A stretch of DNA of 64,000 nt, taken from the IMG/VR virus record IMGVR_UViG_3300022921_000002, positions 62,001 through 126,000 of that record, one strand, 5' to 3'. This document shows positions 6,250-41,819 of this stretch, piece after piece. How positions within the stretch are numbered: position 1 is the stretch's first letter; each line of letters starts with the position of its first letter. Under the pieces are notes generated by a model that worked only from the letters and a program-made list of their open reading frames with translations, was not told the DNA's origin and searched no databases. A program made the translations under genes and the position numbers.

Positions 6250-6254
6250 GAAAC

Positions 6255-24810: not shown

Positions 24811-24818
24811 GGATATAT

Positions 24819-28176: not shown

Positions 28177-28205
28177 AATATAACTGATTCTAAACCAAAT
28201 GTCAA
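28177..28205 (-). promoter_or_regulatory. Early promoter with TAGAATCAGT spacer (copy 2)
   Basis: TTGACA-17-TATATT; a second GANTC at 28171-28175. Confidence 0.85.
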
Positions 28206-28236
28206 TAGGAAACATCATTTTTTAGTAGATAAATCT

Positions 28237-28265
28237 ATGATAACACAGCTATGATAGTCTGTCAA
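28237..28265 (-). promoter_or_regulatory. Tandem sigma70 promoter TTGACA-17-TATCAT
   Basis: Extended -10 TG present. Confidence 0.6.
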
Positions 28266-28292
28266 CAAAATAAATAAGACATGGAGGAGTAA

Positions 28293-28394
28293 ATGAAACT
28301 AAAGTATAGAATCAAGTTCTTTATGTCTAAATTAAAGTTTTGGAAAAAAGGAAGTTACGGTAAAGGTACGTTCATCTACGAAGATGATGATTAG
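28293..28394 (+). CDS. 33-aa basic peptide with acidic tail
   Basis: MKLKYRIKFFMSKLKFWKKGSYGKGTFIYEDDD; strong SD GGAGGAG; upstream AATAAATA late-like box. Confidence 0.55.
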   Translation: MKLKYRIKFFMSKLKFWKKGSYGKGTFIYEDDD

Positions 28395-28986
28395 GTTCAT
28401 AATTAAATGTTTTGATATCTCTTTCATACCAATCTCCTATATCATTTATAAGCTTAGGAGTCCAAAGATTAGGGTAATCGCCTGTGACATTATACTTTTC
28501 TTGTAGTTCAACGCTGAAATAGTTTTTTACATCTTTCTTTAAAGTCTCAGTTTTCATCACATGGCACATTATTTTCCCATCATCGTTAGTAATGTGGTCT
28601 AATTGATTATGCCAATGAAGATGTGGTCTGTGCCATGTGAACGGCATTTCTATAAGTCTGTGCCTATCTTCAATAAATGCCTCAAAGCTTGAAAGATCAG
28701 TACCATGAACCTCATAATCTCTTGTCTTTGCATGCCAATAGCGAGAAGCTGTTCTCTGCCATGGATTTCTTACAACAGCAAATGCTTCAAACTTATCTCT
28801 ATATTCTGGGTAAAGGTCTTTCCATCTACTATGCTCAGCTCCTGGATATCCAATAACTTTTAAGCCCTGAATATAATCATAGTCTTTTAATTTATCTACA
28901 GTGTTAATGATAATTTGAGACTTTAGTGCGTTGCAATATCTTATAGAGAACCCACCTGTCTTTGGAATATGAATAAAAATTTTCAT
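28372..28986 (-). CDS. Sulfotransferase (Sulfotransfer_2 family)
   Basis: PAPS-binding motifs FIHIPKTGG and VRNPWQR. Confidence 0.85.
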   Translation of the reverse strand: MKIFIHIPKTGGFSIRYCNALKSQIIINTVDKLKDYDYIQGLKVIGYPGAEHSRWKDLYPEYRDKFEAFAVVRNPWQRTASRYWHAKTRDYEVHGTDLSSFEAFIEDRHRLIEMPFTWHRPHLHWHNQLDHITNDDGKIMCHVMKTETLKKDVKNYFSVELQEKYNVTGDYPNLWTPKLINDIGDWYERDIKTFNYEPNHHLRR

Positions 28987-29438
28987 AATCTATATACTGC
29001 GTATGCATTTTCTCCGTGTTTAAATGTCATCCACTCAGTCATACGAATGAACCCAAACTCTTCAGCATGAGAAAATGTAGGCCTACGAGGTAAACACCAT
29101 AAAAACTCACAACCTTCTCTTCTTCCTTGGTCTGCCACAGCTTGCCACATTATTTGAGATAACTTTTGTCTTCTATAATCTTCATCTACCCACACTCCAC
29201 GTCCTCTATAATAAGTTTCTGAAGTCTTGTGTCCTGAGTTTGAAGCTATAAGTTTATCTCCGTCATACAAGCCCCAGTAGGTGGCTTTATATTTTGTAAA
29301 TATTTCTTTATTGTTTCCAAGTTCAGGAAAAGTCATATCAGAAATATAATAGTGCTCATTCCCAGGCCACAACTTGTCCCAGGCTTCTTTAATCTGTTCT
29401 TTGGTTATTTCTCTAAGCTGATAATTCTGCATAGTCAT
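28983..29438 (-). CDS. GNAT acetyltransferase
   Basis: RGVWVDEDYRRQKLS acetyl-CoA motif. Confidence 0.8.
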   Translation of the reverse strand: MTMQNYQLREITKEQIKEAWDKLWPGNEHYYISDMTFPELGNNKEIFTKYKATYWGLYDGDKLIASNSGHKTSETYYRGRGVWVDEDYRRQKLSQIMWQAVADQGRREGCEFLWCLPRRPTFSHAEEFGFIRMTEWMTFKHGENAYAVYRL

Positions 29439-29961
29439 TCAGTACATTTACTACAAGGTGTATTCTATCTTCTTTACTTGAATTGAAGGCAGTGTGCTTT
29501 AACATAGTATTGGTTAAATACCACGTGTCTTGTTTGAGATGCATAATCTCATCATCTATAACCATAAAGCATCCTTCCTGTGTTTTTACAGGATAGTGTA
29601 TTCTTATTTGAGAATCAGTATGCCATGATAAACAAGTAAACGGTAAAGATTTCATTAATCTGACTCTACCGATTTTATATCTTTCATTCAACATATTATA
29701 AACAGTTTCAAGTACGGTGCCACGGAACACTGAGCACACGGTGTTGAAATCTTGTTCCTTGAGTTCTGTTTCTCGCAATGGTACTATAGTCTGACCATTT
29801 TTATAAACCTTTTTTGACCAATCATATTTCAAACTACCACATGCCATCTTTGTGTTATCAGGTGCATCCGATGTAGTTGTAATACCGATCTGTGTTTGAC
29901 CATCCCATTCAATATGATCTAATGTAAATGGCGGTAATTCTAATTCAGTAAAATTTTTCAT
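29413..29961 (-). CDS. Aspartyl/asparaginyl beta-hydroxylase-like 2OG-Fe(II) oxygenase
   Basis: RVRLM, WHTD, RIHYP, HTAFN, RIHLV. Confidence 0.75.
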   Translation of the reverse strand: MKNFTELELPPFTLDHIEWDGQTQIGITTTSDAPDNTKMACGSLKYDWSKKVYKNGQTIVPLRETELKEQDFNTVCSVFRGTVLETVYNMLNERYKIGRVRLMKSLPFTCLSWHTDSQIRIHYPVKTQEGCFMVIDDEIMHLKQDTWYLTNTMLKHTAFNSSKEDRIHLVVNVLNDYAELSA

Positions 29962-30650
29962 GGTTCAATCACAAGAAAAGGATATTCTAATTCGTGTACG
30001 ATTTGAATAGTACCACCAAGATGGCCTAATACGAACGGTGGTCTATACATTGTCAAAAATGTTTGGCATGGAGTATTATTTGCTTGTATCTGATCTCGTA
30101 TCAATACATTGTTATCGGTAAGATAAGCTATGTTTGTATCGGTCTCATTCTCTAAGTTACGTATATCAATACTTGACCCATCTCTTTCAACACGTGCCTT
30201 ATAAAACCTATCAAGTAATTTTGTACTATTCGTTCCGATAAGACTGATGATGATTTTCTTATAGGTAAATGTTTCTTTCATCCACCGAACGGTTTGTTTG
30301 AACTCATTAAAATCTGTATGGGTAAATACACTAAACGCAAAAATAATATCTTGCTTTGTATTGATATTGGGAAACGGTTCGTCGAGATTACCAGTCTGAT
30401 TATAAACTTTATTATATTTGTTATAGTGAAAAAAGTTAGCATCAGGATAATTTTTTGCACCAACATCCAATGCACCTTTATCAACATCAACACAAGTATA
30501 GTTACTTTGTTTGATTGGAAAATTATCAAACGATAATAGGTTACCTTGATTGCCACCCCAATCTAAAAATGTTGTTGTACTTGATAAATCATCAACCTCT
30601 AAAAGGCTGTTAAGACTGATTACCGATTTTTCTACCGGGTATAAATCCAT
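29958..30650 (-). CDS. Class I SAM-dependent methyltransferase
   Basis: FLDWGGNQG, CVDVD, FSVFTH. Confidence 0.75.
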   Translation of the reverse strand: MDLYPVEKSVISLNSLLEVDDLSSTTTFLDWGGNQGNLLSFDNFPIKQSNYTCVDVDKGALDVGAKNYPDANFFHYNKYNKVYNQTGNLDEPFPNINTKQDIIFAFSVFTHTDFNEFKQTVRWMKETFTYKKIIISLIGTNSTKLLDRFYKARVERDGSSIDIRNLENETDTNIAYLTDNNVLIRDQIQANNTPCQTFLTMYRPPFVLGHLGGTIQIVHELEYPFLVIEP

Positions 30651-31344
30651 AATCCCAATCTCCCCATATTAATTTGCGTTCACCACAAGACCAACATACA
30701 CCACACGGTTTTTCTGTGTCAGGTATATTAGTACAGCATGACCTCGTTTCCTGCAACAAATCAAATAAATCAAATCTCCTGTAGATTGACGCAACAAACC
30801 TTTTATCAACATTTGCAAATGGAGAATAGTATGGATATCCAAATCTATCAATTGTAATAGGAATATCGTTTTCATTCCGTATACCAATCATTGGATCACA
30901 TTCTTTCCAAAGATTAATATGCGTACCATCTTTTAATTCAATGTCAACATCAAATCGAGGGTTAGCTGTATTACCGCCAATAAGCATATCATACTCACCA
31001 CGGCCAAACACTTCTTTTTGATATTTATGTAGGTGAGAGTCGTTATAATCATCACCGTAGACTGTATGGTGAGACAAGATGTTGTGGTAATCAAACTTGC
31101 TAATCATATATTCAATGATGTTGGCAGACCTTCGTGCCTGCCATCTATACCGCTTGTCAAAGGCTAGAGTAAGGCATCCAATCGTTGTATCGTGTCGGTT
31201 ATTTTCCGTTAAGTATTTGATTAGTAAATAAAAAACCAATGCCGAATCAGCACCACCGCTTAAATTAAAAAGTATTCTTTTACATTCTAACGGTATTTCA
31301 AAGCTTATAGATTGACCAAACTCATCCTCAAGATACATCATCAA
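30610..31344 (-). CDS. QueC-like PP-loop ATPase
   Basis: LSGGADS and TRSCC...PCGVCWSC Zn motif. Confidence 0.7.
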   Translation of the reverse strand: MMMYLEDEFGQSISFEIPLECKRILFNLSGGADSALVFYLLIKYLTENNRHDTTIGCLTLAFDKRYRWQARRSANIIEYMISKFDYHNILSHHTVYGDDYNDSHLHKYQKEVFGRGEYDMLIGGNTANPRFDVDIELKDGTHINLWKECDPMIGIRNENDIPITIDRFGYPYYSPFANVDKRFVASIYRRFDLFDLLQETRSCCTNIPDTEKPCGVCWSCGERKLIWGDWDYGFIPGRKIGNQS

Positions 31345-32161
31345 TCCACTTGTTTATCGCTGCACCGAGGTTTATTTGTCCTTTTGCATCAGGATGAGAG
31401 TCAAGTTCTGAAATTTTACTTTCTGCTGATATCCATTTACCACCAATCTCTTTCCATACAGGCCAACCATATACTTCAACAGGTTTGATCTTTTCAACTT
31501 TTGCAAATGCCTCGCCTGAGATTAATTCGTTTAAAATTGCCTTAGTTAAAAAACAATTCTCAACTCTTTCATCAATCATTAAGTTAAAAACTTTCCATTC
31601 CTTGGGGTGCTTTTGTCTAAAGTTATCGAGGTACCACCACCAGTAATCGGATGTAAACGGCCATATTGGGACATCAGATTGAAATATATTTAATTTAATA
31701 TTAAGTTTACGGCATAACATAATTACCTTCTCAATATAAAACAACGTGTTTTCTAATATAGGTATAGGTCCGTCGAGTGCTAATGGCAATGTATGTAAAC
31801 CCATTAAGTATTCAGCGCTTGAGTTATCTTTTCTGAATTTCTTTTCAGAATTAGATTCCATTGCAAACACCTCCCACCTTTTACAAGGCATTATTCTGCG
31901 CCTACCTAATTGCAATCTTGACCAATCGGTAAGTTGCCAACAAATGTGTGATGGAGGATCATCTGATAATACCGCGTCCATTATTTCAATATAAGCATAC
32001 TCATTTGAACTACCAGATCTACCTTTATTAACGGCAGGCAATCCCAAATGCTTTCCAACATATTCTGGCCATTTCGGCCATGAGCAATCAAGTTCTTCAT
32101 GCTGAAAAGAAAAGTAATTGTGGTCAGTCCAACTACATCCTACTGCAAGCAAATAACTCAT
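31328..32161 (-). CDS. SGNH/GDSL hydrolase-like protein
   Basis: GCSWT block I, GRSGSSN, DSHP block V. Confidence 0.65.
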   Translation of the reverse strand: MSYLLAVGCSWTDHNYFSFQHEELDCSWPKWPEYVGKHLGLPAVNKGRSGSSNEYAYIEIMDAVLSDDPPSHICWQLTDWSRLQLGRRRIMPCKRWEVFAMESNSEKKFRKDNSSAEYLMGLHTLPLALDGPIPILENTLFYIEKVIMLCRKLNIKLNIFQSDVPIWPFTSDYWWWYLDNFRQKHPKEWKVFNLMIDERVENCFLTKAILNELISGEAFAKVEKIKPVEVYGWPVWKEIGGKWISAESKISELDSHPDAKGQINLGAAINKWIDDVS

Positions 32162-33930
32162 TACATTATCAACCCAAAGTTTTTAGAAATAAAGTGTATG
32201 AATTGAAGTTCTTTAAACTTTATGTTTGTTTCTAACTCATGCTTTCTTTGTTTAAAATGGCGGTTGGTTGGATCATAGGCAGCCAGCTTAGTAGTATCGT
32301 GTTTGAAATGCCATTTCTCTTGTAGGCGCATTACAGGTACATTATTGATCTTAGTCTTATATGACATTATAGTTTCATTATCGTGTCCAAATGATCTACG
32401 GATCTCCTCAGTATACATTGAGAATTCCTTAACCTCATCCATTAAATCTAACAATTCATCAATGCCACCAAAATAATCAAGTTGTTCCATAATCTTTCGG
32501 CTTGACATCATAATCCCAGTATTGAATACCCAATTGTCACCATCAAGATCTTCCTCTGCCAACAATGCGTGCGCATTCCAATACTTTGCTTGGGGATTAC
32601 GGAAATCTTTATTATAATTTTTGAAATATAATGGATCTCTTACATTAACTCCTGCTTCATACGCGGTGTTTACATCACAACAAAATCCTTGTTCTGCTCT
32701 CAAATAATTAAACGCATCAAACTTATCAGCAAAATATACATCGTAATCAATATACAAAACTAAATCATAATCGTGAGTTAATTTATCAAGTAACCAAACT
32801 TTATATAGATTAATAATATTGTATTCTGTTAGTTGTGGAAATCTTGCCGCAAATGTTTCGTATTGCTCATCACGCCCAAACTGAATAAATTCTGCACCGC
32901 ATAGATCTGCATAATCTCGGTGGTTTTTATCTAACTTATCTTTAAATTCTGCAAGCCGTTGTTTAACACGGAGACTTTTCGGAACATCATCATCGGATGG
33001 ACCACGAGGATTGTCAAGACGTTCGTCAGGTATTTCAATATAAATTGAATAGATACATTTAGTTTTATCGTTAAAGAAATGATTGAACTTTTTATTAATA
33101 AAATGAGCAACCTTAATCTCATCCCAATCAACAGTTATAAGATCATCGGATACAATGTAATGCCATTCTCTATCCATCAAAACATACGGGATATTGAATT
33201 CTTCCATAATCCATGAAAACAATGATTCGTTGTTTGGATAATAATACATTCTCAAATAAGTACTATTAACACCCATAAGATTATCGTGCTTTATTTGATT
33301 AATCTTTTTTATGCCTTTTTTAATTCTTGCGATATACTTGATCTTTTTGATGTGTTCAGACTTGCCAACCATAATACCTGTATTCATCACATGGCAATCA
33401 AACTTATCATTAAGTAGATCTCTTGTGATATGGTATTTTAATGTTGGGTTACGCACGCCAATTTCTTGAAAGACAACTTCATTAATGTTTCTATTCAATA
33501 TCTTTTCATCTTGATCTTTAATATGAATGCCTTTACTCAAATCCAATTCATCAAACATATTCTCATCGGTATTGAATACCACATCCATATCAATATACAT
33601 TACTTCATCATATTCTTCAGCAAGTTTGGCAAATAAGTGATGTTTATATAAGTTAACCTTTGTAAACTCAACGTCGTGCTCGACAACAAAGTCTTTCATT
33701 GTGTTATGGAATAATTTAAATTCTACACCAATTTTATCGGCATAATCTTTTTTGTTGTCAATCAGTTTATCCCAATAATCTTTTTGCTGTTCGTGTGACC
33801 AATGATTAACATTCCATGCATCATCTTCACGACTAATATCATCCCAAACTGTAAATATAATTCGTTTCATATACCAATCACCATATATCTTTGATATTGA
33901 GCATTCTCCGGTGTAGTAAATCCTGACCAA
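32161..33930 (-). CDS. Tandem two-domain GT-A glycosyltransferase
   Basis: Two repeats: K..L...YIDMDV...MNTGIM and K..L...YIDYDV...FNTGIM. Confidence 0.75.
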   Translation of the reverse strand: MVRIYYTGECSISKIYGDWYMKRIIFTVWDDISREDDAWNVNHWSHEQQKDYWDKLIDNKKDYADKIGVEFKLFHNTMKDFVVEHDVEFTKVNLYKHHLFAKLAEEYDEVMYIDMDVVFNTDENMFDELDLSKGIHIKDQDEKILNRNINEVVFQEIGVRNPTLKYHITRDLLNDKFDCHVMNTGIMVGKSEHIKKIKYIARIKKGIKKINQIKHDNLMGVNSTYLRMYYYPNNESLFSWIMEEFNIPYVLMDREWHYIVSDDLITVDWDEIKVAHFINKKFNHFFNDKTKCIYSIYIEIPDERLDNPRGPSDDDVPKSLRVKQRLAEFKDKLDKNHRDYADLCGAEFIQFGRDEQYETFAARFPQLTEYNIINLYKVWLLDKLTHDYDLVLYIDYDVYFADKFDAFNYLRAEQGFCCDVNTAYEAGVNVRDPLYFKNYNKDFRNPQAKYWNAHALLAEEDLDGDNWVFNTGIMMSSRKIMEQLDYFGGIDELLDLMDEVKEFSMYTEEIRRSFGHDNETIMSYKTKINNVPVMRLQEKWHFKHDTTKLAAYDPTNRHFKQRKHELETNIKFKELQFIHFISKNFGLIM

Positions 33931-34538
33931 AATACTCTTGTTAAACCCAATGATTTTTCAAATTCTTCAATACTGTTATGAGTATTAATGTGCTCAGCTT
34001 CATTATGAAAGTTATTACTTTGAAAGCATACAATGCAATTTGGTTTCTTAAGGCGGATAATCATTTCAATATCCTCCTGTTCCATATGCTCACAACTTGT
34101 ATTAATAATGAGTTGAAAATTTTCTGCGCGTTCAATAAAATAATCTATTGCATCATCATGCTTCCAATGAATATTTTGGCAATGCTCAATATCTTTGTGT
34201 AGCATAGGACCGTATATTTCACATTGGTAATCTGAATCAACATTCCATACCGCAACATCATTATCGAGATGTTCTTTCATTAATAATCCGGCAATACCAT
34301 ACCATGCACCCATAACTAAAACGTGCTCAATCGGCCCGTCTCGTAGAAAGGTTTCATCGTTTACAAATTCTTTGAGGTTTTCAACCAGCCATTGCTTACT
34401 TGTTGTTTGGCTAGGATTAACGGCAGTCATAATATCGAGTGAACGGTATAAATCTACATTAGGATTATACTTTGACTCAACATATATTTCTTCAATTATT
34501 TTAAGAGCATTTTTATAAAGTGTTTCTAGGTAATTCAT
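33867..34538 (-). CDS. SAM-dependent methyltransferase-like protein
   Basis: SKQWL, VLVMGAWYG, VDSD, INTSCEHM. Confidence 0.65.
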   Translation of the reverse strand: MNYLETLYKNALKIIEEIYVESKYNPNVDLYRSLDIMTAVNPSQTTSKQWLVENLKEFVNDETFLRDGPIEHVLVMGAWYGIAGLLMKEHLDNDVAVWNVDSDYQCEIYGPMLHKDIEHCQNIHWKHDDAIDYFIERAENFQLIINTSCEHMEQEDIEMIIRLKKPNCIVCFQSNNFHNEAEHINTHNSIEEFEKSLGLTRVFWSGFTTPENAQYQRYMVIGI

Positions 34539-35130
34539 ATTTCATTCCATTATACATATCAATTGGTGCAGTGCCATTATAAGGATTGGCAATTGAGTTT
34601 ACTAATCCGTGTTCAAACGTATTAAATTCAATACCTTCATGGACAAGAAAACGATCTATACCTGCGTACTTTCTCATAAAGTAATCTTTATTTGACATAA
34701 AGTGATCCCAGATATGATTCTGTTCACCAGCAGTCCATGTGATTACTGAACTATTTATGTGAACATCATAAGCATGAGGTGCCATGTATAAATCGTCTTT
34801 CCAATAATCTTTAATGATTGTTAACCCATCCCAATTCAACCATGGGCGCGGATCAGCTTTAATATCCATGTCTAAATCAAAGAATAAACATTTACCTCTG
34901 ACTGGAAAATCTTTACTAAACATTGCAAGTTTATTCCACCAAAATCTAAGTGATGGTTTTTTGAAACATGGAATACACTCAATCTCAACATTCAACGGAT
35001 TATCAGTATAGCACAAGTATTGAGAATTAGGATAGTATTCTCGTAGCTGATCTCTCAATCTGTTAACGTGTTCAGGGTCGTACTTGTCACCATGTTTCAC
35101 AAATATAATATTATCGGTCATTAATTGCAT
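34513..35130 (-). CDS. GT8-like glycosyltransferase
   Basis: KHGDKY, WWNKL, FFDLD, INSSV. Confidence 0.75.
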   Translation of the reverse strand: MQLMTDNIIFVKHGDKYDPEHVNRLRDQLREYYPNSQYLCYTDNPLNVEIECIPCFKKPSLRFWWNKLAMFSKDFPVRGKCLFFDLDMDIKADPRPWLNWDGLTIIKDYWKDDLYMAPHAYDVHINSSVITWTAGEQNHIWDHFMSNKDYFMRKYAGIDRFLVHEGIEFNTFEHGLVNSIANPYNGTAPIDMYNGMKYELPRNTL

Positions 35131-36211
35131 TCCTCAATAAGTTCATAATTTTTGTAACTGCATTCCTGCTATTACGGTTAGACAGGTTTAATATTTTTAG
35201 TCTATTCATTATATCTTCTAATACATCTTTTGATAACAAATTAATATTCCAATTTTCAGTATGCTGCCGTCCTGCTCTATCATATGCATTTATAAACGCG
35301 CCAAAACCATTCCACTCCGCATATTTAAAAAACAAATCAATATTTTCGGCATTGACTTTCATAAGAGTTGAATTAACTTTAATGTTTTCAGGACCTAATA
35401 CATCTTTAAACTTTTGAATGTTATCCATTGTTTCATTATACTTACCGCCAATTCTAATCATATCATATTCCGATTCAACAACAGTATCTAATGAAACTGA
35501 AAGACTAATGTTGTTTTCTTGGCACATCCTTAAAACTTTTTTATTAAATACACTACCGTTAGTACAGATTTGTACTCTCATCTCAGGATTAATGTCGGCA
35601 ATCAACGCACAAAGTTTATATAATGCTTTATGAGAAAACGGTTCTCCACCAACAAATCTTATCTCTTTTAGGTGTGGAATAAACTCGACAAACTGTTCAA
35701 GCAATTGTTCTAGGTTTTCATCATTATCAAACACGTTTGGATCATATTGTTTAAGATCTTTATCGCGTCCTAACATATGTTTTGATGATAATTCGCCAAA
35801 GCACATTGGGCACGCCATATTACACAGATTACTAATTTCAAATTCAAAAACTCTAGGCCATGAGTTAGCATCCATTGCGTGTTCTAATCTATCTCTGCCA
35901 ACATTATAATCATATTCAATAATAGGTGGTGTTTCACCTTTATCAATTCTTTTTTGACAAGCAGCCTGACAACCTGCACTTAATTTATTCTCAAGGAAGT
36001 CATCTTTATAAGTGTTGTTTAATTCACCAAACCAATAATCTTTTAAACCAAACTGATCTTTTTTCCATATTTTCATTTTACGGCTAAAGCAGCAAGGATG
36101 CATCCCGCCGTTTCTTCTTATTCGCATATGATTAAATGCGGCATAGCATGAGATAATTTTATGTTCTTCGGGTATAGTTCGTTTACTTTGAAATAAATCC
36201 CACTTATTCAT
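35111..36211 (-). CDS. Radical SAM protein with N-terminal twitch/SPASM-like cluster
   Basis: CNMACPMC (CX3CX2C), GGEP; N-terminal C...PCC...C. Confidence 0.9.
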   Translation of the reverse strand: MNKWDLFQSKRTIPEEHKIISCYAAFNHMRIRRNGGMHPCCFSRKMKIWKKDQFGLKDYWFGELNNTYKDDFLENKLSAGCQAACQKRIDKGETPPIIEYDYNVGRDRLEHAMDANSWPRVFEFEISNLCNMACPMCFGELSSKHMLGRDKDLKQYDPNVFDNDENLEQLLEQFVEFIPHLKEIRFVGGEPFSHKALYKLCALIADINPEMRVQICTNGSVFNKKVLRMCQENNISLSVSLDTVVESEYDMIRIGGKYNETMDNIQKFKDVLGPENIKVNSTLMKVNAENIDLFFKYAEWNGFGAFINAYDRAGRQHTENWNINLLSKDVLEDIMNRLKILNLSNRNSRNAVTKIMNLLRNAINDR

Positions 36212-37415
36212 TATCTTTGTATTCCTTCAAATATGGAGCCAAATCCCATATGTCTTCATTATTTTCACGTGCCACTAAACAAAAGTCAATCCATTCAACC
36301 ATTCTTTCTTGTATCTCTGCCTTTTCGCCATTCCATTCTTCTTCTTGTGGTACAACACTTAATACGTTATTAGTATTACTCAAATCAAGTTTTGGGTTTC
36401 GCCAATAAAATTTATCGACTTGTTCAAATTTAGAATTAAGATATTCAAATAGTTTATCAATACCTTCTTTTTGGTGATGATCCTCTAACCAAACAGGTGA
36501 ACAATATTTTGGAAATGTAACAAGGTTTGCCATACTTACACGAGGCACACCAGGTACATCAATAAAGTAATCAATCAATTCTGGTAAGTGCATCCAATTA
36601 TAAATTGAGACCGTTGCAACAACTATTACGATGCGTCCTTCGACAGCGTGGTACCGATTGATATTATTTATTGTGCGTTCAAAGTTACCGCCACGGATCC
36701 AATCATATGTTTCGTGTACTCCATCAATACTTGCTTGAATGTGTACTTCTTCAATCTGATGTAAAATATCAATAACAGTATTAGTAACCAATTGAAAGTT
36801 AGTACAAATCTCAACACGGCATTTAGGATTTGTTTCCGCAACCTTTTTCAATATTTTTATATTGTTTGGGTCAGCAAATGGTTCACCACCTTTAATGGTT
36901 AGGTGCTGTAAATGTGGAACAAGATCAAGTACCTTATCAACATCGGCGTCAGTCATCTTATACATATCAGTGTGGAATTTATGATTTTGGTTTCGCCAAT
37001 CTAAACCAGACTCCACCGCCATTTTTTCATATGGTGCCCACTTTGACGAATACTTACCTGAACAGGTTACGCACATTTGGTTACAGATATTACTTGTTGT
37101 AAGCTCAAGAAACCTTATTGGTGTTACCTCAGCGGCAACGTCTTCTTCATATGTTGGAAATTTAAAACGGTTGTAAGTATCAAACCGAGCAAGGCGCCCT
37201 GCATCCCAATGGCGCCAACAGACATCACATTGAGGCGGGAATTTCTTTTCTTTAAAATCTGCACGGATTTGGTTGTATATATCACCGTTAAAGAACTCAG
37301 TTAAATCAGGAACATCTTTAATATGTGATACCGCAGTGTTATCACCGGCACAGCATAAGACAATTTCTCCAATAGGATTGATTGTCAATCCAGTTTCAGG
37401 TACCATACATTTCAT
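36204..37415 (-). CDS. Radical SAM protein with N-terminal twitch/SPASM-like cluster
   Basis: CNQMCVTC, GGEP; N-terminal C...LCC...CDVC. Confidence 0.9.
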   Translation of the reverse strand: MKCMVPETGLTINPIGEIVLCCAGDNTAVSHIKDVPDLTEFFNGDIYNQIRADFKEKKFPPQCDVCWRHWDAGRLARFDTYNRFKFPTYEEDVAAEVTPIRFLELTTSNICNQMCVTCSGKYSSKWAPYEKMAVESGLDWRNQNHKFHTDMYKMTDADVDKVLDLVPHLQHLTIKGGEPFADPNNIKILKKVAETNPKCRVEICTNFQLVTNTVIDILHQIEEVHIQASIDGVHETYDWIRGGNFERTINNINRYHAVEGRIVIVVATVSIYNWMHLPELIDYFIDVPGVPRVSMANLVTFPKYCSPVWLEDHHQKEGIDKLFEYLNSKFEQVDKFYWRNPKLDLSNTNNVLSVVPQEEEWNGEKAEIQERMVEWIDFCLVARENNEDIWDLAPYLKEYKDNE

Positions 37416-37420
37416 AATAA

Positions 37421-38008
37421 TTAATCCAATACTGTGTTGATAATAGAGATTGCCTCAGTAATTTTAGTTGAGCGTCGGATTTTAGATTTGATTTCTTTTG
37501 GTGCCTTTTTAATTATATCTTGTTCTAATGACCATAGTTTAAATTTAAATACTGCTTCTTTATTAGTATTGTTATCAAGGATATATTCAAACGCAACATT
37601 ATCAACCTTATTCGTTTTCATTTTAAATGCTTGGTCCAACGTTGTCAAGTCATCTTTTGTTTTCTCAAGGTCCACACGTTTTGTATGTAGATCTTTAAGT
37701 ACACGTGCCTTTTCTTTTTCAAGTTCTTCAATACCAAGGATCTCCCTTGCCCTCATATTAACACGTGTATTGAACTCACGAGAATAACGACGTTTAAATT
37801 CTACCGTGTCATCAAGAATTGATTCTTCATCCCATCCTTCTTCAATCAATGCTTTATAATCTGCGCTATCGGGATTGTTTTCAATAACGTGAGCAACTTT
37901 AGTGTCGCCATCCTCGAATATAATCTCAATTGTATTATAACCTTCATCTATATAATGTGCTTCAATTACCTTACCACTAAACACTGACATCTTCATCACC
38001 CTCATCAA
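37421..38008 (-). CDS. Hypothetical protein (paralogue of 37977..38486)
   Basis: VFSGKVIEAHY...DYKALIEEGW...SREF...FKFKLWSLE. Confidence 0.7.
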   Translation of the reverse strand: MMRVMKMSVFSGKVIEAHYIDEGYNTIEIIFEDGDTKVAHVIENNPDSADYKALIEEGWDEESILDDTVEFKRRYSREFNTRVNMRAREILGIEELEKEKARVLKDLHTKRVDLEKTKDDLTTLDQAFKMKTNKVDNVAFEYILDNNTNKEAVFKFKLWSLEQDIIKKAPKEIKSKIRRSTKITEAISIINTVLD

Positions 38009-38486
38009 TAGCTTGTTGGATTATACCTAACGTGCTCAAAATTGTTTTACTTTTACGAATATCTCGTTTTAATTTTGAATCACTGTCTTTAATAAAAGGC
38101 AATTCCAACGCCCATAATTTAACTTTAAATATTTCTTCTTTACTTGTATTGTTATCCATAATAGCTTCATACTTATCAAGACCCATTGTTTTGAGTTTTT
38201 TCTCAGCCTTCATACTTTGACTAATAATTAAATGCTTTGCCTGGGCATTAACAAATGTTGCAAATTCTCTACTTGTTCTCTGTTTATATTCTGCAGTTGA
38301 ATCGAGGAGTCTATCTTTTGTCCATCCTTCTTCAACCAGATCAATATAATCAGGATTATCGGTATCATCTGCGGGAAGGTGGAATACGTGCTCTTTGCCA
38401 TCATCGTCAAGCCATTTGACAAAAATAGTATCGTAGTTGTTACTGATATAATACGCTGTAACTATGCGTTTGCTAAATACTGCCAT
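37977..38486 (-). CDS. Hypothetical protein (paralogue of 37421..38008)
   Basis: VFSKRIVTAYY...DYIDLVEEGW...SREF...FKVKLWALE. Confidence 0.7.
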   Translation of the reverse strand: MAVFSKRIVTAYYISNNYDTIFVKWLDDDGKEHVFHLPADDTDNPDYIDLVEEGWTKDRLLDSTAEYKQRTSREFATFVNAQAKHLIISQSMKAEKKLKTMGLDKYEAIMDNNTSKEEIFKVKLWALELPFIKDSDSKLKRDIRKSKTILSTLGIIQQAIDEGDEDVSV

Positions 38487-38501
38487 AATATATTCACTTT
38501 C

Positions 38502-39545
38502 TTATGATTTTACAATTCTTAAATAATATGTTTCTCTTGTTTGTGTTACACCGCTTGGAAATTCTTGAGTACGATAATCATCGGTATTGACAAATCTTGT
38601 TTGGTAACCGTCATCTGATTCACCTGATAGATATGTATCCGCCATACCCGTACCACGTTGCAGCCCATCACCTGTATATGTCGAGTCAGTGATTTCATAT
38701 GTGATCTTATAACCATCAACAGTACGAGCAACAAGGTTGATTTCATATGAAAGCATATCTTGGAATTCTTCCAACGTATATGTTTGCACTGATCCATCGG
38801 CGGCGGCGTAACATGGAATTTTTACACCAAATTCTGTCCCATCACTCGAGACATTAATTTCGCTAACGGCATTCTTTATGTATAGATAATAAGTGTTTAC
38901 AATAAAATAAATGTCACGGTCATAAAAAGGTTCGCCAATCTGATCTCCAGGTGTGACATCATAACCGCCAGTTATATCATATTTTGAATCTTGGAAAACT
39001 GAACGTGTTCCTACTTGAGTAAAACCAGATTCAGCACCTGTACCAATTTTATATGTGCCTTGCTGATTATCGCCAACAGCTTGGAATGCCATTTCGTTAA
39101 TCGTAGGATAAATGTATGTGTCACGGAAATCCTCACGAGACATAGAACGCAAATTAGCATCACTATCAACGTATAACGGATATCGGTGTGTTTCTTCTGA
39201 TATTGGATATGTTGGCTCAGTTATAGAATTAAATCTTTGTTTAATACCACGCCAAGGTGTTGTAACTAATTCAATGTCAGGTGTTTCCGCAGGAGTGTCA
39301 AAATTTGTTATGTCGGTGGTATCTTCGCCTGCTTTATAACGTGTATCCGTAATAGTACCAATAATATCAGGATCATTAGCAAACTGTGTAAACGGGTTTA
39401 ATACATATAACTCAACTGCGGGGTTTAGTGCATATTGCCGTGCTGCTTCACGTCGCCAAAACGATTGTTCTAGGGATGGTGATTCTCGAAACGATAACAC
39501 ACCGTTAGTGTCAACTGAAACATAGGCTGCTGTGCGTGCGGTCAT
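38502..39545 (-). CDS. Putative virion structural protein (paralogue of 39779..40774)
   Basis: Thr/Asp-rich; DFRDTYIYPTI, GTYKI, YRTQEFPSG; late promoter upstream. Confidence 0.6.
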   Translation of the reverse strand: MTARTAAYVSVDTNGVLSFRESPSLEQSFWRREAARQYALNPAVELYVLNPFTQFANDPDIIGTITDTRYKAGEDTTDITNFDTPAETPDIELVTTPWRGIKQRFNSITEPTYPISEETHRYPLYVDSDANLRSMSREDFRDTYIYPTINEMAFQAVGDNQQGTYKIGTGAESGFTQVGTRSVFQDSKYDITGGYDVTPGDQIGEPFYDRDIYFIVNTYYLYIKNAVSEINVSSDGTEFGVKIPCYAAADGSVQTYTLEEFQDMLSYEINLVARTVDGYKITYEITDSTYTGDGLQRGTGMADTYLSGESDDGYQTRFVNTDDYRTQEFPSGVTQTRETYYLRIVKS

Positions 39546-39757
39546 TAATCATCACTTCCACAGTAAAATGTTTTAAGAACGGTACCGTCTGAAGCTTTAA
39601 CTTCAAACTTGTGATCCTTGGCAACCACACCAGAGTTAATTGTCGCGGTTGTAATTTTTTGGTTAATGATGGTAGACGTTCCTGCGTCAATATCGGCAAT
39701 GTTTTCTAAATGCCGAGTATCATCAATAACTATGCTAGTTCCTACTTTTAATGGCAT
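39545..39757 (-). CDS. Small virion/fibre protein (paralogue of 40787..40972)
   Basis: LKVGTSIVIDD...LKTFYC. Confidence 0.6.
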   Translation of the reverse strand: MPLKVGTSIVIDDTRHLENIADIDAGTSTIINQKITTATINSGVVAKDHKFEVKASDGTVLKTFYCGSDD

Positions 39758-39775
39758 CCTTGCCTCCTATGAATT

Positions 39776-39783
39776 TATTTATA
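39776..39783 (-). promoter_or_regulatory. Late promoter TATAAATA
   Basis: tatttata 19 nt upstream of the 39757 start. Confidence 0.7.
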
Positions 39784-40774
39784 TTTTTCTAATACGAAGA
39801 CCATATGAAATTAGATTTGTCGGTGAACCAACCGGGAATTCTTGAGTACGATATAAGTCATTACCTGTTGTTCCAACTTGTCTTGTTGTATAACCTGCTG
39901 CTGATGTTCCGTCAAGAATCGTGTCATTCATCAATGTACCTTTGAGTGTAAGAGGACTTGAACTACTTGTAAGGCTATATTGAATTTCATTTCCTGTAGA
40001 ATCAGACGCAATGTGTTTTAACTCACCGAGAATTAAAGCATCAAATGCCGCAACAGTATATTGTCTAATATCTCCATTTGTGTCAATATAAAAAGGTGGT
40101 TCATATGCTACCGCCGACGTATTAACTTTATGTAAGTAATACTGATTAATAATGATTGGCTGATCTTCATTCTCAGGAATACCACCTGACGTATAAACTG
40201 CAGAATCAGCACGCCTATCAATAAACACGGGGTTGGCATTTTGGAGTGTTGCACCTGTAACACTATTTGTTGCCGCAATAAAATATGTACCACCTTGGTC
40301 CGCGGTTTCACCTGAAGAAACAAGTGCATCAATTGTAGGAATAATAAACGTATCTCTAAAATCAGCTTTGGTCATTGCTCTAATTCCGAGTGATCCTGTC
40401 CCAACTGCATATACAGGAAACGCAAGGTTTTCATCAGTATACGTAGGTGCTGCTGCTAAAGTATAATCAACTTGTAATGTAGTATAGGTAACTTCTTCAC
40501 TACCTGTATCAGGTGTGGCTGCCTCAGATGCATAGTTAGCAACAGTAGAAGGACCGTTTTCTGTTGCCGCTCCAGCTGTCCTACGAGTATCAATCATACT
40601 ACCCATATTACCACCACTTGCAACACGAGAAACTGTAACTACTTCATCGTTTGCTAATAGGTGTGCTGCATTTTGAAATATGGCTTGCAGATCTGTACTT
40701 GACATTTCAGTAAGTCTTGTCACTGCAGTATTGGAATTTGCTTCATCCCAATATAATGGTAACCTTGCTGTCAT
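39779..40774 (-). CDS. Putative virion structural protein (paralogue of 38502..39545)
   Basis: DFRDTFIIPTI, GTYFI, YRTQEFPVG. Confidence 0.6.
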   Translation of the reverse strand: MTARLPLYWDEANSNTAVTRLTEMSSTDLQAIFQNAAHLLANDEVVTVSRVASGGNMGSMIDTRRTAGAATENGPSTVANYASEAATPDTGSEEVTYTTLQVDYTLAAAPTYTDENLAFPVYAVGTGSLGIRAMTKADFRDTFIIPTIDALVSSGETADQGGTYFIAATNSVTGATLQNANPVFIDRRADSAVYTSGGIPENEDQPIIINQYYLHKVNTSAVAYEPPFYIDTNGDIRQYTVAAFDALILGELKHIASDSTGNEIQYSLTSSSSPLTLKGTLMNDTILDGTSAAGYTTRQVGTTGNDLYRTQEFPVGSPTNLISYGLRIRKI

Positions 40775-40786
40775 TTTATTGTCCTT

Positions 40787-40972
40787 TTATAAGGCGCAAT
40801 AATACGCAGCAATAATTGTGCCTGCCGCATTATAAACTGTTAGAACATTTGCTTGGTTTTTAATTGAGTTATTAATCGCGGTATCAGTTGTTGTATCTGT
40901 GCTTGCCACGTTTTTTAACTGTAACGCATTATCAATTACTTCGGTGCCTGCTACTTGAATCGCCATCTTCAT
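40787..40972 (-). CDS. Small virion/fibre protein
   Basis: AIQVAGTEVID...IAAYYC. Confidence 0.6.
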   Translation of the reverse strand: MKMAIQVAGTEVIDNALQLKNVASTDTTTDTAINNSIKNQANVLTVYNAAGTIIAAYYCAL

Positions 40973-41003
40973 CTCCTTTGACTATTAGCAATCTTATTAG
41001 TTT

Positions 41004-41015
41004 TATTTATAAATA
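41004..41015. promoter_or_regulatory. Palindromic bidirectional late promoter TATTTATAAATA
   Basis: Contains TATAAATA on both strands between divergent genes. Confidence 0.8.
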
Positions 41016-41066
41016 TTCTCAGTGAGTTATTTGCTATGTTACTGATTTTTTCACAGGAGCTATTAT

Positions 41067-41438
41067 ATGGCTTATGTCAACGCCTTTGGAGTGGAGATGA
41101 AAACTATGGCAAAGAAAGAAATAACAGTTGATGCTGAAGCAGCAGCTGCACTCGACACAAATAATGACGGTCATATCTCGGCAGAAGAGCTGAGTATGGA
41201 GTTGGAATTTAAACGCAAGCGCCTTGAAGATCAAGATGCTCAACGAGATGCAATGCGTAAAATGACTTGGTTTGCATTGTTTGGAATGTTATTGTACCCA
41301 GTAGGTATTGCTATAACATCATGGTTAGGATTAGATGAAGCATCAGGATTAATTGGAGATATTGCACCGACATATTTTGTTGCAATTTCTGCACTTGTTT
41401 CTGTTTTCTTTGGTGCTAACGCATACAGTAGTAAGTAA
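41067..41438 (+). CDS. EF-hand plus 2-TM holin-like protein
   Basis: Canonical loop DTNNDGHISAEE; two TM helices; late promoter; second in-frame start at 41106. Confidence 0.6.
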   Translation: MAYVNAFGVEMKTMAKKEITVDAEAAAALDTNNDGHISAEELSMELEFKRKRLEDQDAQRDAMRKMTWFALFGMLLYPVGIAITSWLGLDEASGLIGDIAPTYFVAISALVSVFFGANAYSSK

Positions 41439-41441
41439 AAC

Positions 41442-41476
41442 AAAAATAGGGAGGCTAACTTAATAACCTCCCTATT
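41442..41476. terminator. Hairpin terminator between convergent units
   Basis: 10-bp stem AATAGGGAGG/CCTCCCTATT; T-tail on the minus strand. Confidence 0.7.
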
Positions 41477-41567
41477 ACTCGGGTCTTGTATGTGGACTTC
41501 GGGCTGTGTGTTACACCTCTCCCAGGCTGTCCCTACCTATCTGGTTTTCACGTCACCAGAATTCCTT

Positions 41568-41634
<67 letters not shown>

Positions 41635-41644
<10 letters not shown>

Positions 41645-41802: not shown

Positions 41803-41819
41803 AATATATCCTTTTTATT

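What the first reader, a model, noticed from the sequence alone, without database searches (positions are those of the whole stretch)
28372..41011. 13-kb late operon joining putative virion proteins to an 11-enzyme tailoring line
Seen: from late promoters at 41004 and 39776, one minus-strand run encodes four putative structural proteins and two paralogous unknowns, then two radical SAM enzymes, a GT8-like enzyme, a methyltransferase, a double GT-A, an SGNH hydrolase, a QueC-like ATPase, a second methyltransferase, a 2OG hydroxylase, a GNAT and a sulfotransferase, nearly all with overlapping stops and starts. Known: similar enzyme-rich islands occur in marine T4-like phages, products unknown. 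Inference: an assembly line for a sulfated, acetylated and methylated glycan or modified residue on fibres or capsid.
Basis: partly seen in the sequence, partly recalled or inferred. Interest (0 to 1): 0.6.

Follow-up and report, generated by a model that had tools for sequence, protein, structure and literature searches.

The report
Late phage operon: fibre-like proteins plus glycan enzymes
An uncultured 221-kb marine T4-like phage has a late-promoter gene run that pairs an unnamed fibre-like protein family with radical SAM enzymes, glycosyltransferases and a swappable set of tailoring enzymes; it most likely decorates a virion protein, but this is unproven.

Summary
The run is real: 17 tightly packed minus-strand ORFs (40972 to 28372) follow a T4-type late motif (TATAAATA, 41011-41004). 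Relatives with only 43-51% protein identity keep that motif at the same place.

The run has two parts.
- **Conserved core:** a small 61/70-aa protein, a 331/347-aa protein of an unnamed family, a ~190-aa coiled-coil protein, radical SAM enzymes with an N-terminal twitch domain, a small DxD protein, a methyltransferase-fold protein and a double GT-A glycosyltransferase. It recurs in about 25 uncultured marine T4-like phages and in Pelagibacter phage Mosig. In the distant ones it sits inside the tail-fibre cluster.
- **Distal six genes:** SGNH-like, PP-loop, methyltransferase, Asp/Asn-hydroxylase-like, GNAT and sulfotransferase. These form a swappable cassette: a phage 96-100% identical in the core carries other genes there.

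Best reading (about 0.4): late glycan and radical-SAM decoration of the co-encoded fibre-like protein. The main rival is glycan hypermodification of 5-hydroxymethylcytosine DNA, because a T4 gp42 homologue lies 3 kb downstream. Against it, Mosig has the module but no such enzyme.

Enzyme islands of this kind were already described in pelagimyophages. The conserved core and its late wiring were not.

The parts
41004..41011 (-). T4-type late promoter motif TATAAATA, 31 nt before the first gene. It overlaps a plus-strand copy at 41008-41015 that faces the divergent gene 41067-41438.
   Evidence: same position in relatives; 8 of 9 motifs in the window lie outside ORF interiors
40787..40972 (-). 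small protein 1 (61 aa), strong RBS, 49% G/S/T/A/N; unnamed family
   Evidence: no Pfam or PHROG match
39779..40774 (-). large protein 1 (331 aa). Unnamed family with a conserved C-terminal DYRTQEFPxG motif. Confident model with three beta-beta-alpha-beta-beta repeats.
39776..39783 (-). second TATAAATA, overlapping the stop of large protein 1; not kept in phages 92-98% identical
39545..39757 (-). small protein 2 (70 aa), paralogue of small protein 1
38502..39545 (-). large protein 2 (347 aa), paralogue of large protein 1 (E 1e-30)
37977..38486 (-). coiled-coil protein 1 (169 aa): N-terminal domain, variable coiled coil, conserved C-terminal helix
37421..37990 (-). coiled-coil protein 2 (189 aa from the ATG that homologues use; the ORF list gives a TTG at 38008). 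An internal sigma-70-like site lies at 37648-37620.
36204..37415 (-). radical SAM enzyme 1 (403 aa): N-terminal SPASM/twitch domain then the CX3CX2C core; NF033640 at 209 bits (cut-off 170)
35111..36211 (-). radical SAM enzyme 2 (366 aa), paralogue; NF033640 at 149.6 bits (below the cut-off); next-best matches are MoaA and viperin
34513..35130 (-). small DxD protein (205 aa), probable GT-A-type transferase; most conserved gene of the core (68-85% in the closer relatives, 41-49% in distant loci)
   Evidence: no HMM or PDB match
33867..34538 (-). 223-aa protein, probably a class I methyltransferase fold (weak evidence)
   Evidence: the Mosig homologue is annotated as a putative methyltransferase; weak WaaS/CpsH match
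32161..33870 (-). double GT-A glycosyltransferase (569 aa from the ATG); each half has YDxVxYxDxDV, NTGI and H..K motifs; encoded as two genes in L026, L028 and L029
31328..32161 (-). first gene of the variable cassette: 277-aa SGNH-like protein (invariant GCS, N and D-x-H-P)
   Evidence: no HMM or PDB support
30610..31338 (-). PP-loop ATP pyrophosphatase, QueC-like (SGGADS motif, C-terminal Cys cluster)
29958..30650 (-). SAM methyltransferase (Methyltransf_12, 29.1 bits, cut-off 30)
29413..29961 (-). Asp/Asn beta-hydroxylase-type 2-oxoglutarate oxygenase
28983..29438 (-). GNAT acetyltransferase
28372..28986 (-). sulfotransferase (Sulfotransfer_2, PAPS-binding motifs); absent from L007, which is 90-100% identical in the neighbouring genes
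28177..28265 (-). end of the unit: 165-nt spacer with two 11/12 sigma-70-like promoters that open the next, early-type unit (ATG at 28151)

Best explanation
The region is a late transcription unit made of a conserved module and a swappable tail. The module encodes a fibre- or adhesin-like virion protein together with the enzymes that decorate it.

Proposed order of events:
1. The late promoter at 41011-41004 drives strong translation of the small+large protein pairs and the coiled-coil proteins. These are read as the structural subunits and an assembly partner.
2. Read-through and translational coupling give low levels of the enzymes.
3. The two twitch-domain radical SAM enzymes either make an unusual sugar donor or alter residues of the protein.
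4. The small DxD transferase and the double GT-A enzyme build a short glycan. The methyltransferase-fold protein methylates it.
5. In this strain the distal cassette then tailors the product: SGNH-like O-acyl handling, PP-loop amidation, methylation, hydroxylation, N- or O-acetylation and sulfation.
6. Because the cassette differs between near-identical phages, the outcome is a strain-variable surface chemistry on a host-recognition part.

Shown:
- gene order, overlaps and paralogy
- the positionally conserved late motif
- the enzyme folds and families listed in the observation check
- conserved neighbourhood of the 331-aa family with the enzymes
- cassette swapping

Inferred:
- that the 331-aa family is in the virion
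- that it is the substrate
- single-transcript read-through
- every chemical step
For: 1. Late wiring. TATAAATA sits 30-32 nt before the first gene in relatives with 43-51% protein identity. The motif is almost confined to non-coding spots in this window. It also precedes the radical SAM gene in L012, where an inserted reverse gene breaks the run. It precedes Mosig's enzyme operon and lies about 120 nt before L006's alternative cassette.

2. Kept neighbourhood. A 331-aa-family gene lies within a few kb of the radical SAM and GT genes in all but one (L024) of the loci with enough flank. This holds through at least four different arrangements, including inversions.

3. Structural context. In L018, L022, L026, L029 and Mosig the module lies among VrlC-like giants, tail-fibre, tail-spike and 'structural protein' genes.

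4. Fibre-like traits. Large protein 1 has 46% G/S/T/A/N, 17% charged residues, no Cys and a strong RBS (large protein 2: 36% and 23%). The enzymes have 21-31% G/S/T/A/N.

5. Longer relatives. The family has 684 representatives. Many are 480-906 aa, with the 331-aa domain at the N-terminus. In one the C-terminal part is an FG-GAP beta-propeller. In two it matches the T4 gp5-type baseplate hub profile. A conserved N-terminal domain with a variable distal domain is the usual tail-fibre layout (my knowledge).

6. Fold of the double GT-A. The 210 Foldseek matches at E<=0.001 are led by protein-glycosylating enzymes: LH3, ColGalT1, Mimivirus R699, UGGT, XXYLT1 and the PBCV-1 capsid glycosyltransferase A64R.

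7. Independence from modified DNA. Complete Mosig has the module but no thymidylate-synthase homologue or TET/JBP enzyme.

8. Presence in RNA libraries. Salt-marsh metatranscriptome assemblies hold the stretch. One 13,401-nt contig, found in two runs, spans about 28179-41579 by arithmetic, which is the whole unit.
Against: - No proteomic or structural evidence places any of these proteins in a virion.
- The 331-aa model has no convincing structural relative. The best Z is 6.3, to beta-prism domains, which is below the aligner's usual background.
- In this genome the module is about 41 kb from VrlC. It is flanked by tRNAs, a nuclease and nucleotide-metabolism genes, not by structural genes.
- A gp42 homologue lies 3 kb downstream. 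GT-A enzymes of this look are known to extend glycans on DNA.
- Foldseek rank among GT-A enzymes says little about the acceptor.
- The contigs from RNA libraries may be contaminating DNA, and they show neither strand nor transcript ends.
- An 11/12 sigma-70-like site inside 37421-37990 could drive the enzymes earlier in this strain.
- The complex prediction for the small+large pair could not be run.
Confidence: 0.4

Rival explanations
1. DNA hypermodification. The phage replaces C by 5-hydroxymethylcytosine. The island's GT-A enzymes and tailoring enzymes build and decorate a glycan on that base late in infection, before packaging.
For: - Window 24819-25517 encodes a close homologue of T4 dCMP hydroxymethylase (PDB 1b49, E 1e-61).
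- Its neighbours include a dCMP deaminase and a MazG-like diphosphohydrolase.
- An NTP-transferase+kinase fusion has the architecture of the RB69/DLP3 UDP-arabinose enzyme (PMC13326640).
- No T4-type alpha- or beta-glucosyltransferase is found in the genome.
- The gp42 homologue lies on the same contigs as the module in L004, L005, L006, L009, L017 and L023.
- Phage GT-A enzymes related to WaaJ/WaaO, with PBCV-1 A64R as the top PDB match, extend glycans on 5hmC. They are often within 10 kb of a thymidylate-synthase homologue (bioRxiv 10.1101/2023.12.21.572611).
- Group transfer to DNA is reported to occur late (PMC13326640).
Against: - Complete Mosig has homologues of the 331-aa protein, both GT types, the methyltransferase-fold protein and the SGNH-like protein (26-34% identity), plus radical SAM genes annotated MoaA-like. 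It has no thymidylate-synthase homologue and no TET/JBP enzyme.
- In distant relatives the module sits in the tail-fibre cluster.
- This rival does not explain the kept neighbourhood with the three non-enzyme families.
- The window already holds a separate candidate DNA-glycosylation pair (20300-21775 and 18713-19975). These are adjacent in Pseudoalteromonas phage XG4 and lie close together in Enterococcus phages, where the second is annotated as a glycosyltransferase.
- That pair and gp42 lie downstream of the sigma-70-like sites at 28265 and 28205, not behind the late motif.
Confidence: 0.2
2. Host envelope remodelling. The enzymes alter the host's LPS O-chain, capsule or another surface glycan. 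This would block superinfection or stop progeny from sticking to debris, as was proposed for pelagimyophage islands.
For: - PMC7029224 describes hypervariable islands with GT8-type glycosyltransferases and radical SAM cassettes in pelagimyophages. It reads them as O-chain modification.
- The Asp_Arg_Hydrox family also contains lipid A/Kdo hydroxylases (my knowledge).
- Bacterial relatives of the radical SAM enzyme (about 25% identity) sit with AsnB-like, UbiA-like and PhyH genes. This is compatible with envelope polymer loci.
- Cassette swapping resembles O-antigen serotype islands.
Against: - Late-motif wiring fits exclusion functions poorly.
- This rival does not explain why the fibre-like protein, the coiled-coil protein and the small protein always travel with the enzymes.
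- No Pfam match suggesting a flippase, polymerase or lipid-carrier enzyme was found in the unit.
Confidence: 0.15
3. Peptide or small-molecule product. The small 61/70-aa proteins are precursors matured by the SPASM/twitch radical SAM enzymes (RiPP-like), or the island makes a diffusible glycosylated metabolite.
For: - The radical SAM enzymes also match many peptide maturases at lower scores, such as YhhB, PapB and GggB.
- The small ORFs are duplicated along with the other genes.
- Cassettes in relatives carry a tryptophan halogenase, a B12-radical SAM enzyme, an AMP-binding enzyme and a SnoaL-like protein.
Against: - The small proteins have no conserved Cys and no leader/core layout. They are not adjacent to the radical SAM genes.
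- Distant loci lack this small family but keep the rest.
- No Pfam match to a protease or transporter was found in the unit.
- The second-best matches of enzyme 2 are the nucleotide-acting MoaA and viperin.
Confidence: 0.07

Closest known systems
Pelagimyophage 'host recognition cluster' islands (Zaragoza-Solas et al. 2020, PMC7029224)
   Same: Hypervariable island in marine T4-like phages that mixes tail-fibre genes, GT8-type glycosyltransferases and radical SAM cassettes. The closest cultured relative of these genes is Pelagibacter phage Mosig.
   Different: - Here the module is not between VrlC and gp14. It lies about 41 kb from VrlC.
- The paper did not define the conserved core, its late motif or the 331-aa family.
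- The paper favoured host O-chain modification.
Chlorovirus PBCV-1 capsid glycosylation (A64R) and Mimivirus R699 / human LH3 collagen glycosylation
   Same: Virus-encoded GT-A enzymes that glycosylate a structural protein. They are among the best structural matches of the 569-aa protein (R699 function from PMC9546862).
   Different: Fold-level likeness only (9-14% identity). The acceptor here is unknown. Radical SAM partners are not part of those systems as far as I know.
Mycobacteriophage virion glycosylation (Freeman et al. 2023, PMC10527164, seen only in reference lists)
   Same: Phage glycosyltransferase genes beside structural genes that glycosylate capsid and tail proteins (my knowledge of that paper).
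   Different: Siphoviruses of actinobacteria with one or two GT genes. They have no radical SAM enzymes, no tailoring cassette and no dedicated substrate family.
Phage cytosine glycan hypermodification (T4, RB69/DLP3, metavirome GT-A/GT-B enzymes; PMC13326640, bioRxiv 10.1101/2023.12.21.572611)
   Same: A thymidylate-synthase homologue within 10 kb, a sugar-activating NTP-transferase/kinase, and GT-A enzymes whose top PDB match is A64R.
   Different: - The module also occurs in a complete genome without any such base-modifying enzyme.
- It sits behind a late motif, together with non-enzyme proteins.
- Radical SAM and sulfotransferase do not occur in the text of that preprint.
Radical SAM/SPASM-twitch enzymes, NCBIfam NF033640 (N-terminal twitch)
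   Same: Enzyme 1 passes the family cut-off. Both enzymes have the CX3CX2C motif and an N-terminal Cys-rich auxiliary domain.
   Different: - The family has no described substrate. I found no paper that uses its accession, its short name or the phrases 'N-terminal twitch' or 'N-terminal SPASM'.
- Bacterial members are only about 25% identical and sit in other contexts.

Membership tests
NCBIfam NF033640 (N_Twi_rSAM) | whole-protein score at or above the curated cut-off (170 bits) | tested here: met
   The 36204-37415 product scores 209.3 bits over model positions 5-397. The 35111-36211 paralogue scores 149.6 bits, below the cut-off, but this is its best family.
NCBIfam NF033640 (N_Twi_rSAM) | CX3CX2C radical SAM motif preceded by an N-terminal Cys-rich twitch/SPASM domain | tested here: met
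   Pfam SPASM matches residues 3-67 and 22-67, ahead of Radical_SAM at 107-282 and 125-294. The motifs CNQMCVTC and CNMACPMC are visible. The Cys columns are invariant in A7.
Glycosyltransferase family 8 (Pfam PF01501) | match to the family HMM | tested here: not met
   No match for the 205-aa or 569-aa proteins at E<=5. No match anywhere in the genome at E<=10. LgtC matches only at E 3.4, around the DxD motif.
GT-A fold glycosyltransferases | GT-A Rossmann-like fold with a DxD motif | tested here: met
   569-aa model: pLDDT 87, and 210 Foldseek matches at E<=0.001, all those shown being GT-A enzymes. A DxD motif is present in both halves. For the 205-aa protein there is only a DxD motif and a language-model lead, so it is inconclusive there.
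SGNH/GDSL hydrolases | conserved blocks (Ser in block I, Asn in block III, Asp/His in block V) and a family HMM match | tested here: inconclusive
   Invariant GCS, N53 and D254-x-H256-P are present. There is no Pfam, PDB-profile or DUF6071 match.
Sulfotransfer_2 (PF03567) | score above the gathering cut-off and PAPS-binding motifs | tested here: met
   24.6 bits against a cut-off of 22. PKTGG and RNPWQRTAS are seen in the sequence. A PAPS source was not established; there is only a weak APS-kinase-like match elsewhere in the genome.
T4-type late transcription unit | TATAAATA-type late promoter just upstream of the first gene | tested here: met
T4-type late transcription unit | mapped transcript start and late timing; late sigma (gp55/gp33) in the genome | not testable with these tools
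   Only assembled contigs of RNA libraries were on hand. They show no ends, strand or level. I did not search for gp55/gp33.
Pelagimyophage host recognition cluster (PMC7029224) | lies between VrlC and the neck gene gp14 | tested here: not met
   The VrlC homologue is at genome 44.0-49.5 kb and the module at 90.4-103.0 kb. In Mosig, L026 and L029 the module does follow the VrlC-like gene.
Pelagimyophage host recognition cluster (PMC7029224) | hypervariable content with glycosyltransferases and radical SAM cassettes | tested here: met
RiPP biosynthetic cluster | precursor peptide with a conserved modifiable core beside its maturase | tested here: not met
   The small proteins have no conserved Cys. 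They are separated from the radical SAM genes by two or more genes. They are absent from distant loci that keep the enzymes.
Phage 5hmC glycan hypermodification pathway | depends on a hydroxymethyl- or hydroxy-pyrimidine synthase in the same genome | tested here: inconclusive
   Met in this genome and in six related contigs. Not met in complete Mosig, which keeps the module.
Virion protein glycosylation systems | glycan demonstrated on a virion protein | not testable with these tools
   This needs virion mass spectrometry.

The most novel reading that the evidence does not exclude
Marine T4-like phages carry a portable 'surface chemistry' module. It consists of a dedicated fibre-like protein family, late-expressed radical SAM enzymes and glycosyltransferases that modify it, and a rapidly exchanged tailoring cassette (sulfation, acetylation, halogenation and others). 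Near-identical phages would then differ in the chemistry of a host-recognition part, as a viral counterpart of bacterial O-antigen serotypes. As far as I know it would be the first case of radical-SAM-dependent modification of a phage virion protein.
Probability: 0.25. Interest if true: 0.8.

Novelty: new variant of a known kind. Interest (0 to 1): 0.55.

Why it matters
If the module decorates a virion protein, host range and immune or defence evasion in abundant marine myoviruses could be tuned by chemistry rather than by protein sequence alone. Cassette swapping would then be a fast route of diversification that sequence-based host prediction cannot see.

It would also give a substrate context to a radical SAM subfamily (N-terminal twitch) that has no described function.

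If the DNA rival is right instead, the island would extend known DNA glycan hypermodification to methylated, acetylated or sulfated forms in an hmC-containing marine phage.

Either way, the core module is a defined, testable unit. The 331-aa family has 684 representatives and the small DxD protein has at least 339 clusters. One cultured carrier exists (Mosig).

Tried and rejected
**Searches that gave nothing**
- Megablast of the region against cultured phages: no match.
- Foldseek of the 331-aa model against PDB and BFVD: nothing.
- VIA wide search of the same model: only Z 6.3 to beta-prism domains, below the usual background.
- The atlas fold library was not available.
- PDB profile searches for the 331-aa, 205-aa and 277-aa families: empty. 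The search for the 569-aa family was not significant.
- hhalign found no link between the 205-aa and 569-aa families, nor between Mosig_00098 and the 331-aa family.
- The Pfam GT8 and DUF6071 models hit nothing in the genome.
- The word-index searches gave only unnamed environmental proteins. Because that tool cannot see much longer kin, I ran the exhaustive search, which did find longer fusions.
- No paper uses the accession or short name of the N-terminal-twitch family, or the phrases 'N-terminal twitch' or 'N-terminal SPASM'.

**Not run or not informative**
- RNA fold of the spacer after 28372: no terminator-like structure (z -1.1).

**Readings rejected**
- Cyanophage: there is no psbA.
- A fixed 11-enzyme line.
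- RiPP precursors.
- Placement in the classical VrlC-gp14 island for this genome.

- No alternative genetic code was used.

Full report
**Source.** The window is bases 62001-126000 of a 221,447-bp IMG/VR virus record rated complete. It is a T4-like phage. It has a gp23 capsid gene, a VrlC-like giant gene and a topoisomerase II gene. It has no psbA. No cultured phage matches the region at the DNA level. The only cultured relative of the two large proteins is Pelagibacter phage Mosig (31-34% identity).

- Seventeen minus-strand ORFs run from 40972 to 28372. Eleven of the 16 junctions overlap by 1-41 nt and the rest are gaps of 5-21 nt.
- The raw count of the motif in the window is what chance gives (9 against 8.8). 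But 8 of the 9 lie outside ORF interiors, which make up only 8.3% of the window (P about 2e-8).
- The motif at 41011-41004 sits 30-32 nt before the homologous first gene in eight relatives. Six of them share only 43-51% identity in that gene. That is good evidence for a working late promoter.
- The motif at 39783-39776 is missing from phages 92-98% identical, so it is dispensable or chance.
- Upstream, the unit is bounded by a divergent plus-strand gene, a strong terminator (41476-41445) and two tRNA genes.
- Downstream, a 165-nt spacer holds two 11/12 sigma-70-like promoters that open an early-type unit.

**The proteins.**
- The 'four structural proteins' are a tandem duplication of a pair: small (61/70 aa) plus large (331/347 aa; E 1e-30).
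- The next two genes are paralogues (E 4e-37). They have an N-terminal domain, a coiled coil of variable length and a conserved C-terminal helix.
- The two radical SAM enzymes are paralogues. They belong to an unusual subfamily in which the Cys-rich SPASM/twitch domain precedes the core. This is NCBIfam NF033640, with 209 bits for the first and 149.6 for the second against a cut-off of 170. They are the only radical SAM genes in the genome.
- The 569-aa protein gave a confident model (pLDDT 87). It has 210 Foldseek matches at E<=0.001, and all those shown are GT-A glycosyltransferases. They are led by two-domain or protein-glycosylating enzymes: LH3, WbbM, Mimivirus R699, LARGE1, UGGT and the PBCV-1 capsid enzyme A64R. 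'Double GT-A' therefore stands. Membership of GT8 by its Pfam model fails.
- The 205-aa protein has a DxD motif. Its nearest named language-model clusters are GT8 and Nucleotid_trans, which is a lead only.
- The 223-aa protein weakly matches class I methyltransferase-fold structures.
- The 277-aa protein has SGNH-like invariant residues but no model support.
- GNAT, Asp_Arg_Hydrox and the sulfotransferase pass Pfam cut-offs. The second methyltransferase and the PP-loop protein fall just under theirs but carry the expected motifs.

**Comparative anatomy.** Twenty-nine related IMG/VR loci were fetched with the first radical SAM enzyme.
- A table of presence and identity, together with gene maps, shows a conserved core. 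The core is a large-protein family member, the coiled-coil protein, one to four twitch radical SAM genes, the 205-aa protein (68-85% identical in the closer relatives), the 223-aa protein and the GT-A pair. The GT-A pair is fused in some loci and split into two genes in others.
- The 61/70-aa small-protein family is confined to the closer relatives.
- The six distal genes are not conserved. L006 is 96-100% identical through the core but carries five other genes on the opposite strand, including FG-GAP, Asp_Arg_Hydrox-like and SnoaL-like proteins. L007 lacks the sulfotransferase. L016 has a B12-radical SAM enzyme, an AMP-binding enzyme and a tryptophan halogenase. L012 has further hydroxylases.
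- In L018, L022, L026, L029 and Mosig the module lies among VrlC-like giants and among genes that match tail-fibre, tail-spike and structural-protein families.
- In this genome and its closer relatives the module has moved as a block to a region of tRNAs, a nuclease and nucleotide metabolism, about 41 kb from VrlC.

**What is the large protein?**
- Its family is unnamed and has no Pfam or PHROG match.
- The model is confident (pLDDT 87, pTM 0.85) and shows three beta-beta-alpha-beta-beta repeats.
- Foldseek finds nothing. The wide structural search gives only Z 6.3 to the beta-prism domains of MACPF proteins and Z 5.0 to the MABP domain. That is no better than background.
- The exhaustive profile search finds 684 representatives. 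Many are 480-906 aa, with this domain at the N-terminus. One continues into an FG-GAP beta-propeller. Two match the T4 gp5-type baseplate hub profile.
- Tail fibres typically have a conserved N-terminal domain with variable distal domains (my knowledge). Large protein 1 also has a G/S/T/A/N-rich, Cys-free composition, and strong RBSs precede the first three genes.
- Taken with the tail-fibre neighbourhood, I read the family as a fibre or adhesin component. This is an inference.

**Mechanism.** The best-supported model is a late unit in which abundant structural subunits are followed by low-level, translationally coupled enzymes that decorate them.
- The late motif also precedes the radical SAM gene in L012, where an inserted reverse gene breaks the run. 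It precedes Mosig's enzyme operon and lies near L006's alternative cassette. Late timing therefore seems to be a property of the enzymes themselves.
- Mosig's island adds entries annotated as sugar aminotransferase, epimerase and carbamoyltransferase. This points to nucleotide-sugar chemistry.
- It is open whether the radical SAM enzymes act on a sugar donor or on the protein. Enzyme 2's next-best matches are MoaA and viperin, which act on nucleotides. Many peptide maturases also match, more weakly.
- Bacterial relatives are about 25% identical and occur at about three copies per locus. They sit with AsnB-like, UbiA-like and PhyH genes, which does not settle the question.

**Expression.** Salt-marsh metatranscriptome assemblies from several studies hold the stretch. 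A 13,401-nt contig, seen in two runs, covers 35100-41050 at its positions 530-6480. By arithmetic it spans about 28179 to 41579, which is the whole unit. Contigs show neither strand, ends nor level, and DNA carry-over is not excluded. This is compatible with one long transcript but does not prove it.

- Window 24819-25517 encodes a close homologue of T4 dCMP hydroxymethylase (E 1e-61 to PDB 1b49).
- Nearby are a dCMP deaminase and a MazG-like diphosphohydrolase.
- There is also an NTP-transferase+kinase fusion whose best solved relative is LicC. That is the same relative and the same architecture reported for the UDP-arabinose enzyme of RB69 and DLP3 (PMC13326640).
- A 420-aa gene neighbours that fusion in other phages (adjacent in Pseudoalteromonas phage XG4), where it is annotated as a glycosyltransferase.
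- The genome lacks T4-type glucosyltransferases.
- GT-A enzymes with A64R as their top PDB match are known to extend glycans on 5hmC DNA (bioRxiv 10.1101/2023.12.21.572611).
- The island could therefore hypermodify DNA.

Four points weigh against this rival:
- Complete Mosig keeps the module but has no thymidylate-synthase homologue and no TET/JBP enzyme.
- The module lives in tail-fibre clusters elsewhere.
- The hmC genes lie downstream of the sigma-70-like promoter sites at 28265 and 28205, whereas the island sits behind the late motif.
- The rival leaves the three non-enzyme families unexplained.

**Other rivals.** The published reading for such islands is host O-chain modification (PMC7029224). 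It fits the enzyme kinds and the variability, but not the late wiring or the kept neighbours. A RiPP-like reading fails on the small proteins. They have no conserved Cys, they are not next to the maturases, and they are absent from distant loci.

**Verdict.**
- The feature is real and well bounded.
Glycan-type tailoring behind a late promoter is supported. The virion target is plausible but unproven. The fixed 11-enzyme line is wrong.
- Islands of this kind are known descriptively. The conserved core, its late wiring, the N-terminal-twitch radical SAM enzymes, the 331-aa family and the cassette swapping are a new variant.

Noticed in passing
window 18713-26322 (minus strand): A probable 5-hydroxymethylcytosine DNA pathway in a marine T4-like phage. 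It comprises a T4 gp42 homologue (24819-25517, E 1e-61), a dCMP deaminase (22402-22905), a MazG-like dGTP_diPhyd_N protein (26011-26322), an NTP-transferase+kinase fusion like RB69 gp52:53 (20300-21775), and a 420-aa partner annotated as a glycosyltransferase in Enterococcus phages (18713-19975). No T4-type alpha- or beta-glucosyltransferase is found in the genome.
   Followed up: partly
window 22905-24143 (-): A beta-ketoacyl synthase (FabF-like, both Pfam domains) sits between the deaminase and the gp42 homologue.
   Followed up: no
window 41445-41893 (-) and 59288-59365 (-): tRNA-Trp(cca) and tRNA-Pro(tgg) are followed by a 13-bp-stem terminator just upstream of the unit. An 11/12 sigma-70-like promoter at 42312-42284 precedes them. 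tRNA-Arg(tct) lies further on.
   Followed up: partly
window 41004-41015 and 41067-41438 (+): The late motif is doubled head to head (TATTTATAAATA), so it may also drive the divergent 123-aa gene. That gene's sequence looks EF-hand-like (DTNNDGHISAEEL) with a hydrophobic tail; this is by eye only.
   Followed up: no
L016:17082-21028, L006:9256-13229, L012:15184-20927: Alternative cassettes at the same site in relatives carry a B12-binding radical SAM enzyme, an AMP-binding enzyme, a tryptophan halogenase, an FG-GAP protein, a SnoaL-like protein and several Asp/Asn-hydroxylase-like genes.
   Followed up: partly
L032-L106 (bacterial genome contigs): Bacterial N-terminal-SPASM radical SAM homologues (about 25% identity) are found mainly in Bacteroidota and Acidimicrobiales. 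There are about three paralogues per locus (204 in 72 loci). They occur with AsnB-like (26 loci), UbiA-like (16) and PhyH (10) genes and an unnamed 365-aa family (22 loci).
   Followed up: partly
genome 205613-205858 (+), outside the window: A 142-aa ORF gives a weak APS_kinase match (30 bits). It is the only hint of a PAPS source for the sulfotransferase, and it may be a generic P-loop kinase.
   Followed up: no
window 37620-37648 (-): A sigma-70-like TTGACA-17-TAAAAT site lies inside the second coiled-coil gene, 233 nt before the first radical SAM gene. It is kept only in the near-identical contigs L003, L006 and L007.
   Followed up: partly
window 35100-41050; runs X1-X4: Salt-marsh metatranscriptome assemblies from several studies hold this phage at 99-100% identity. 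This suggests a coastal or estuarine host rather than an open-ocean one.
   Followed up: partly
window 43040-43504 (-) and 42316-43026 (-): A staphylococcal-nuclease-like gene is conserved upstream of the module in the closer relatives (69-73% identity). Beside it is a phrog_7084 protein of unknown function.
   Followed up: no
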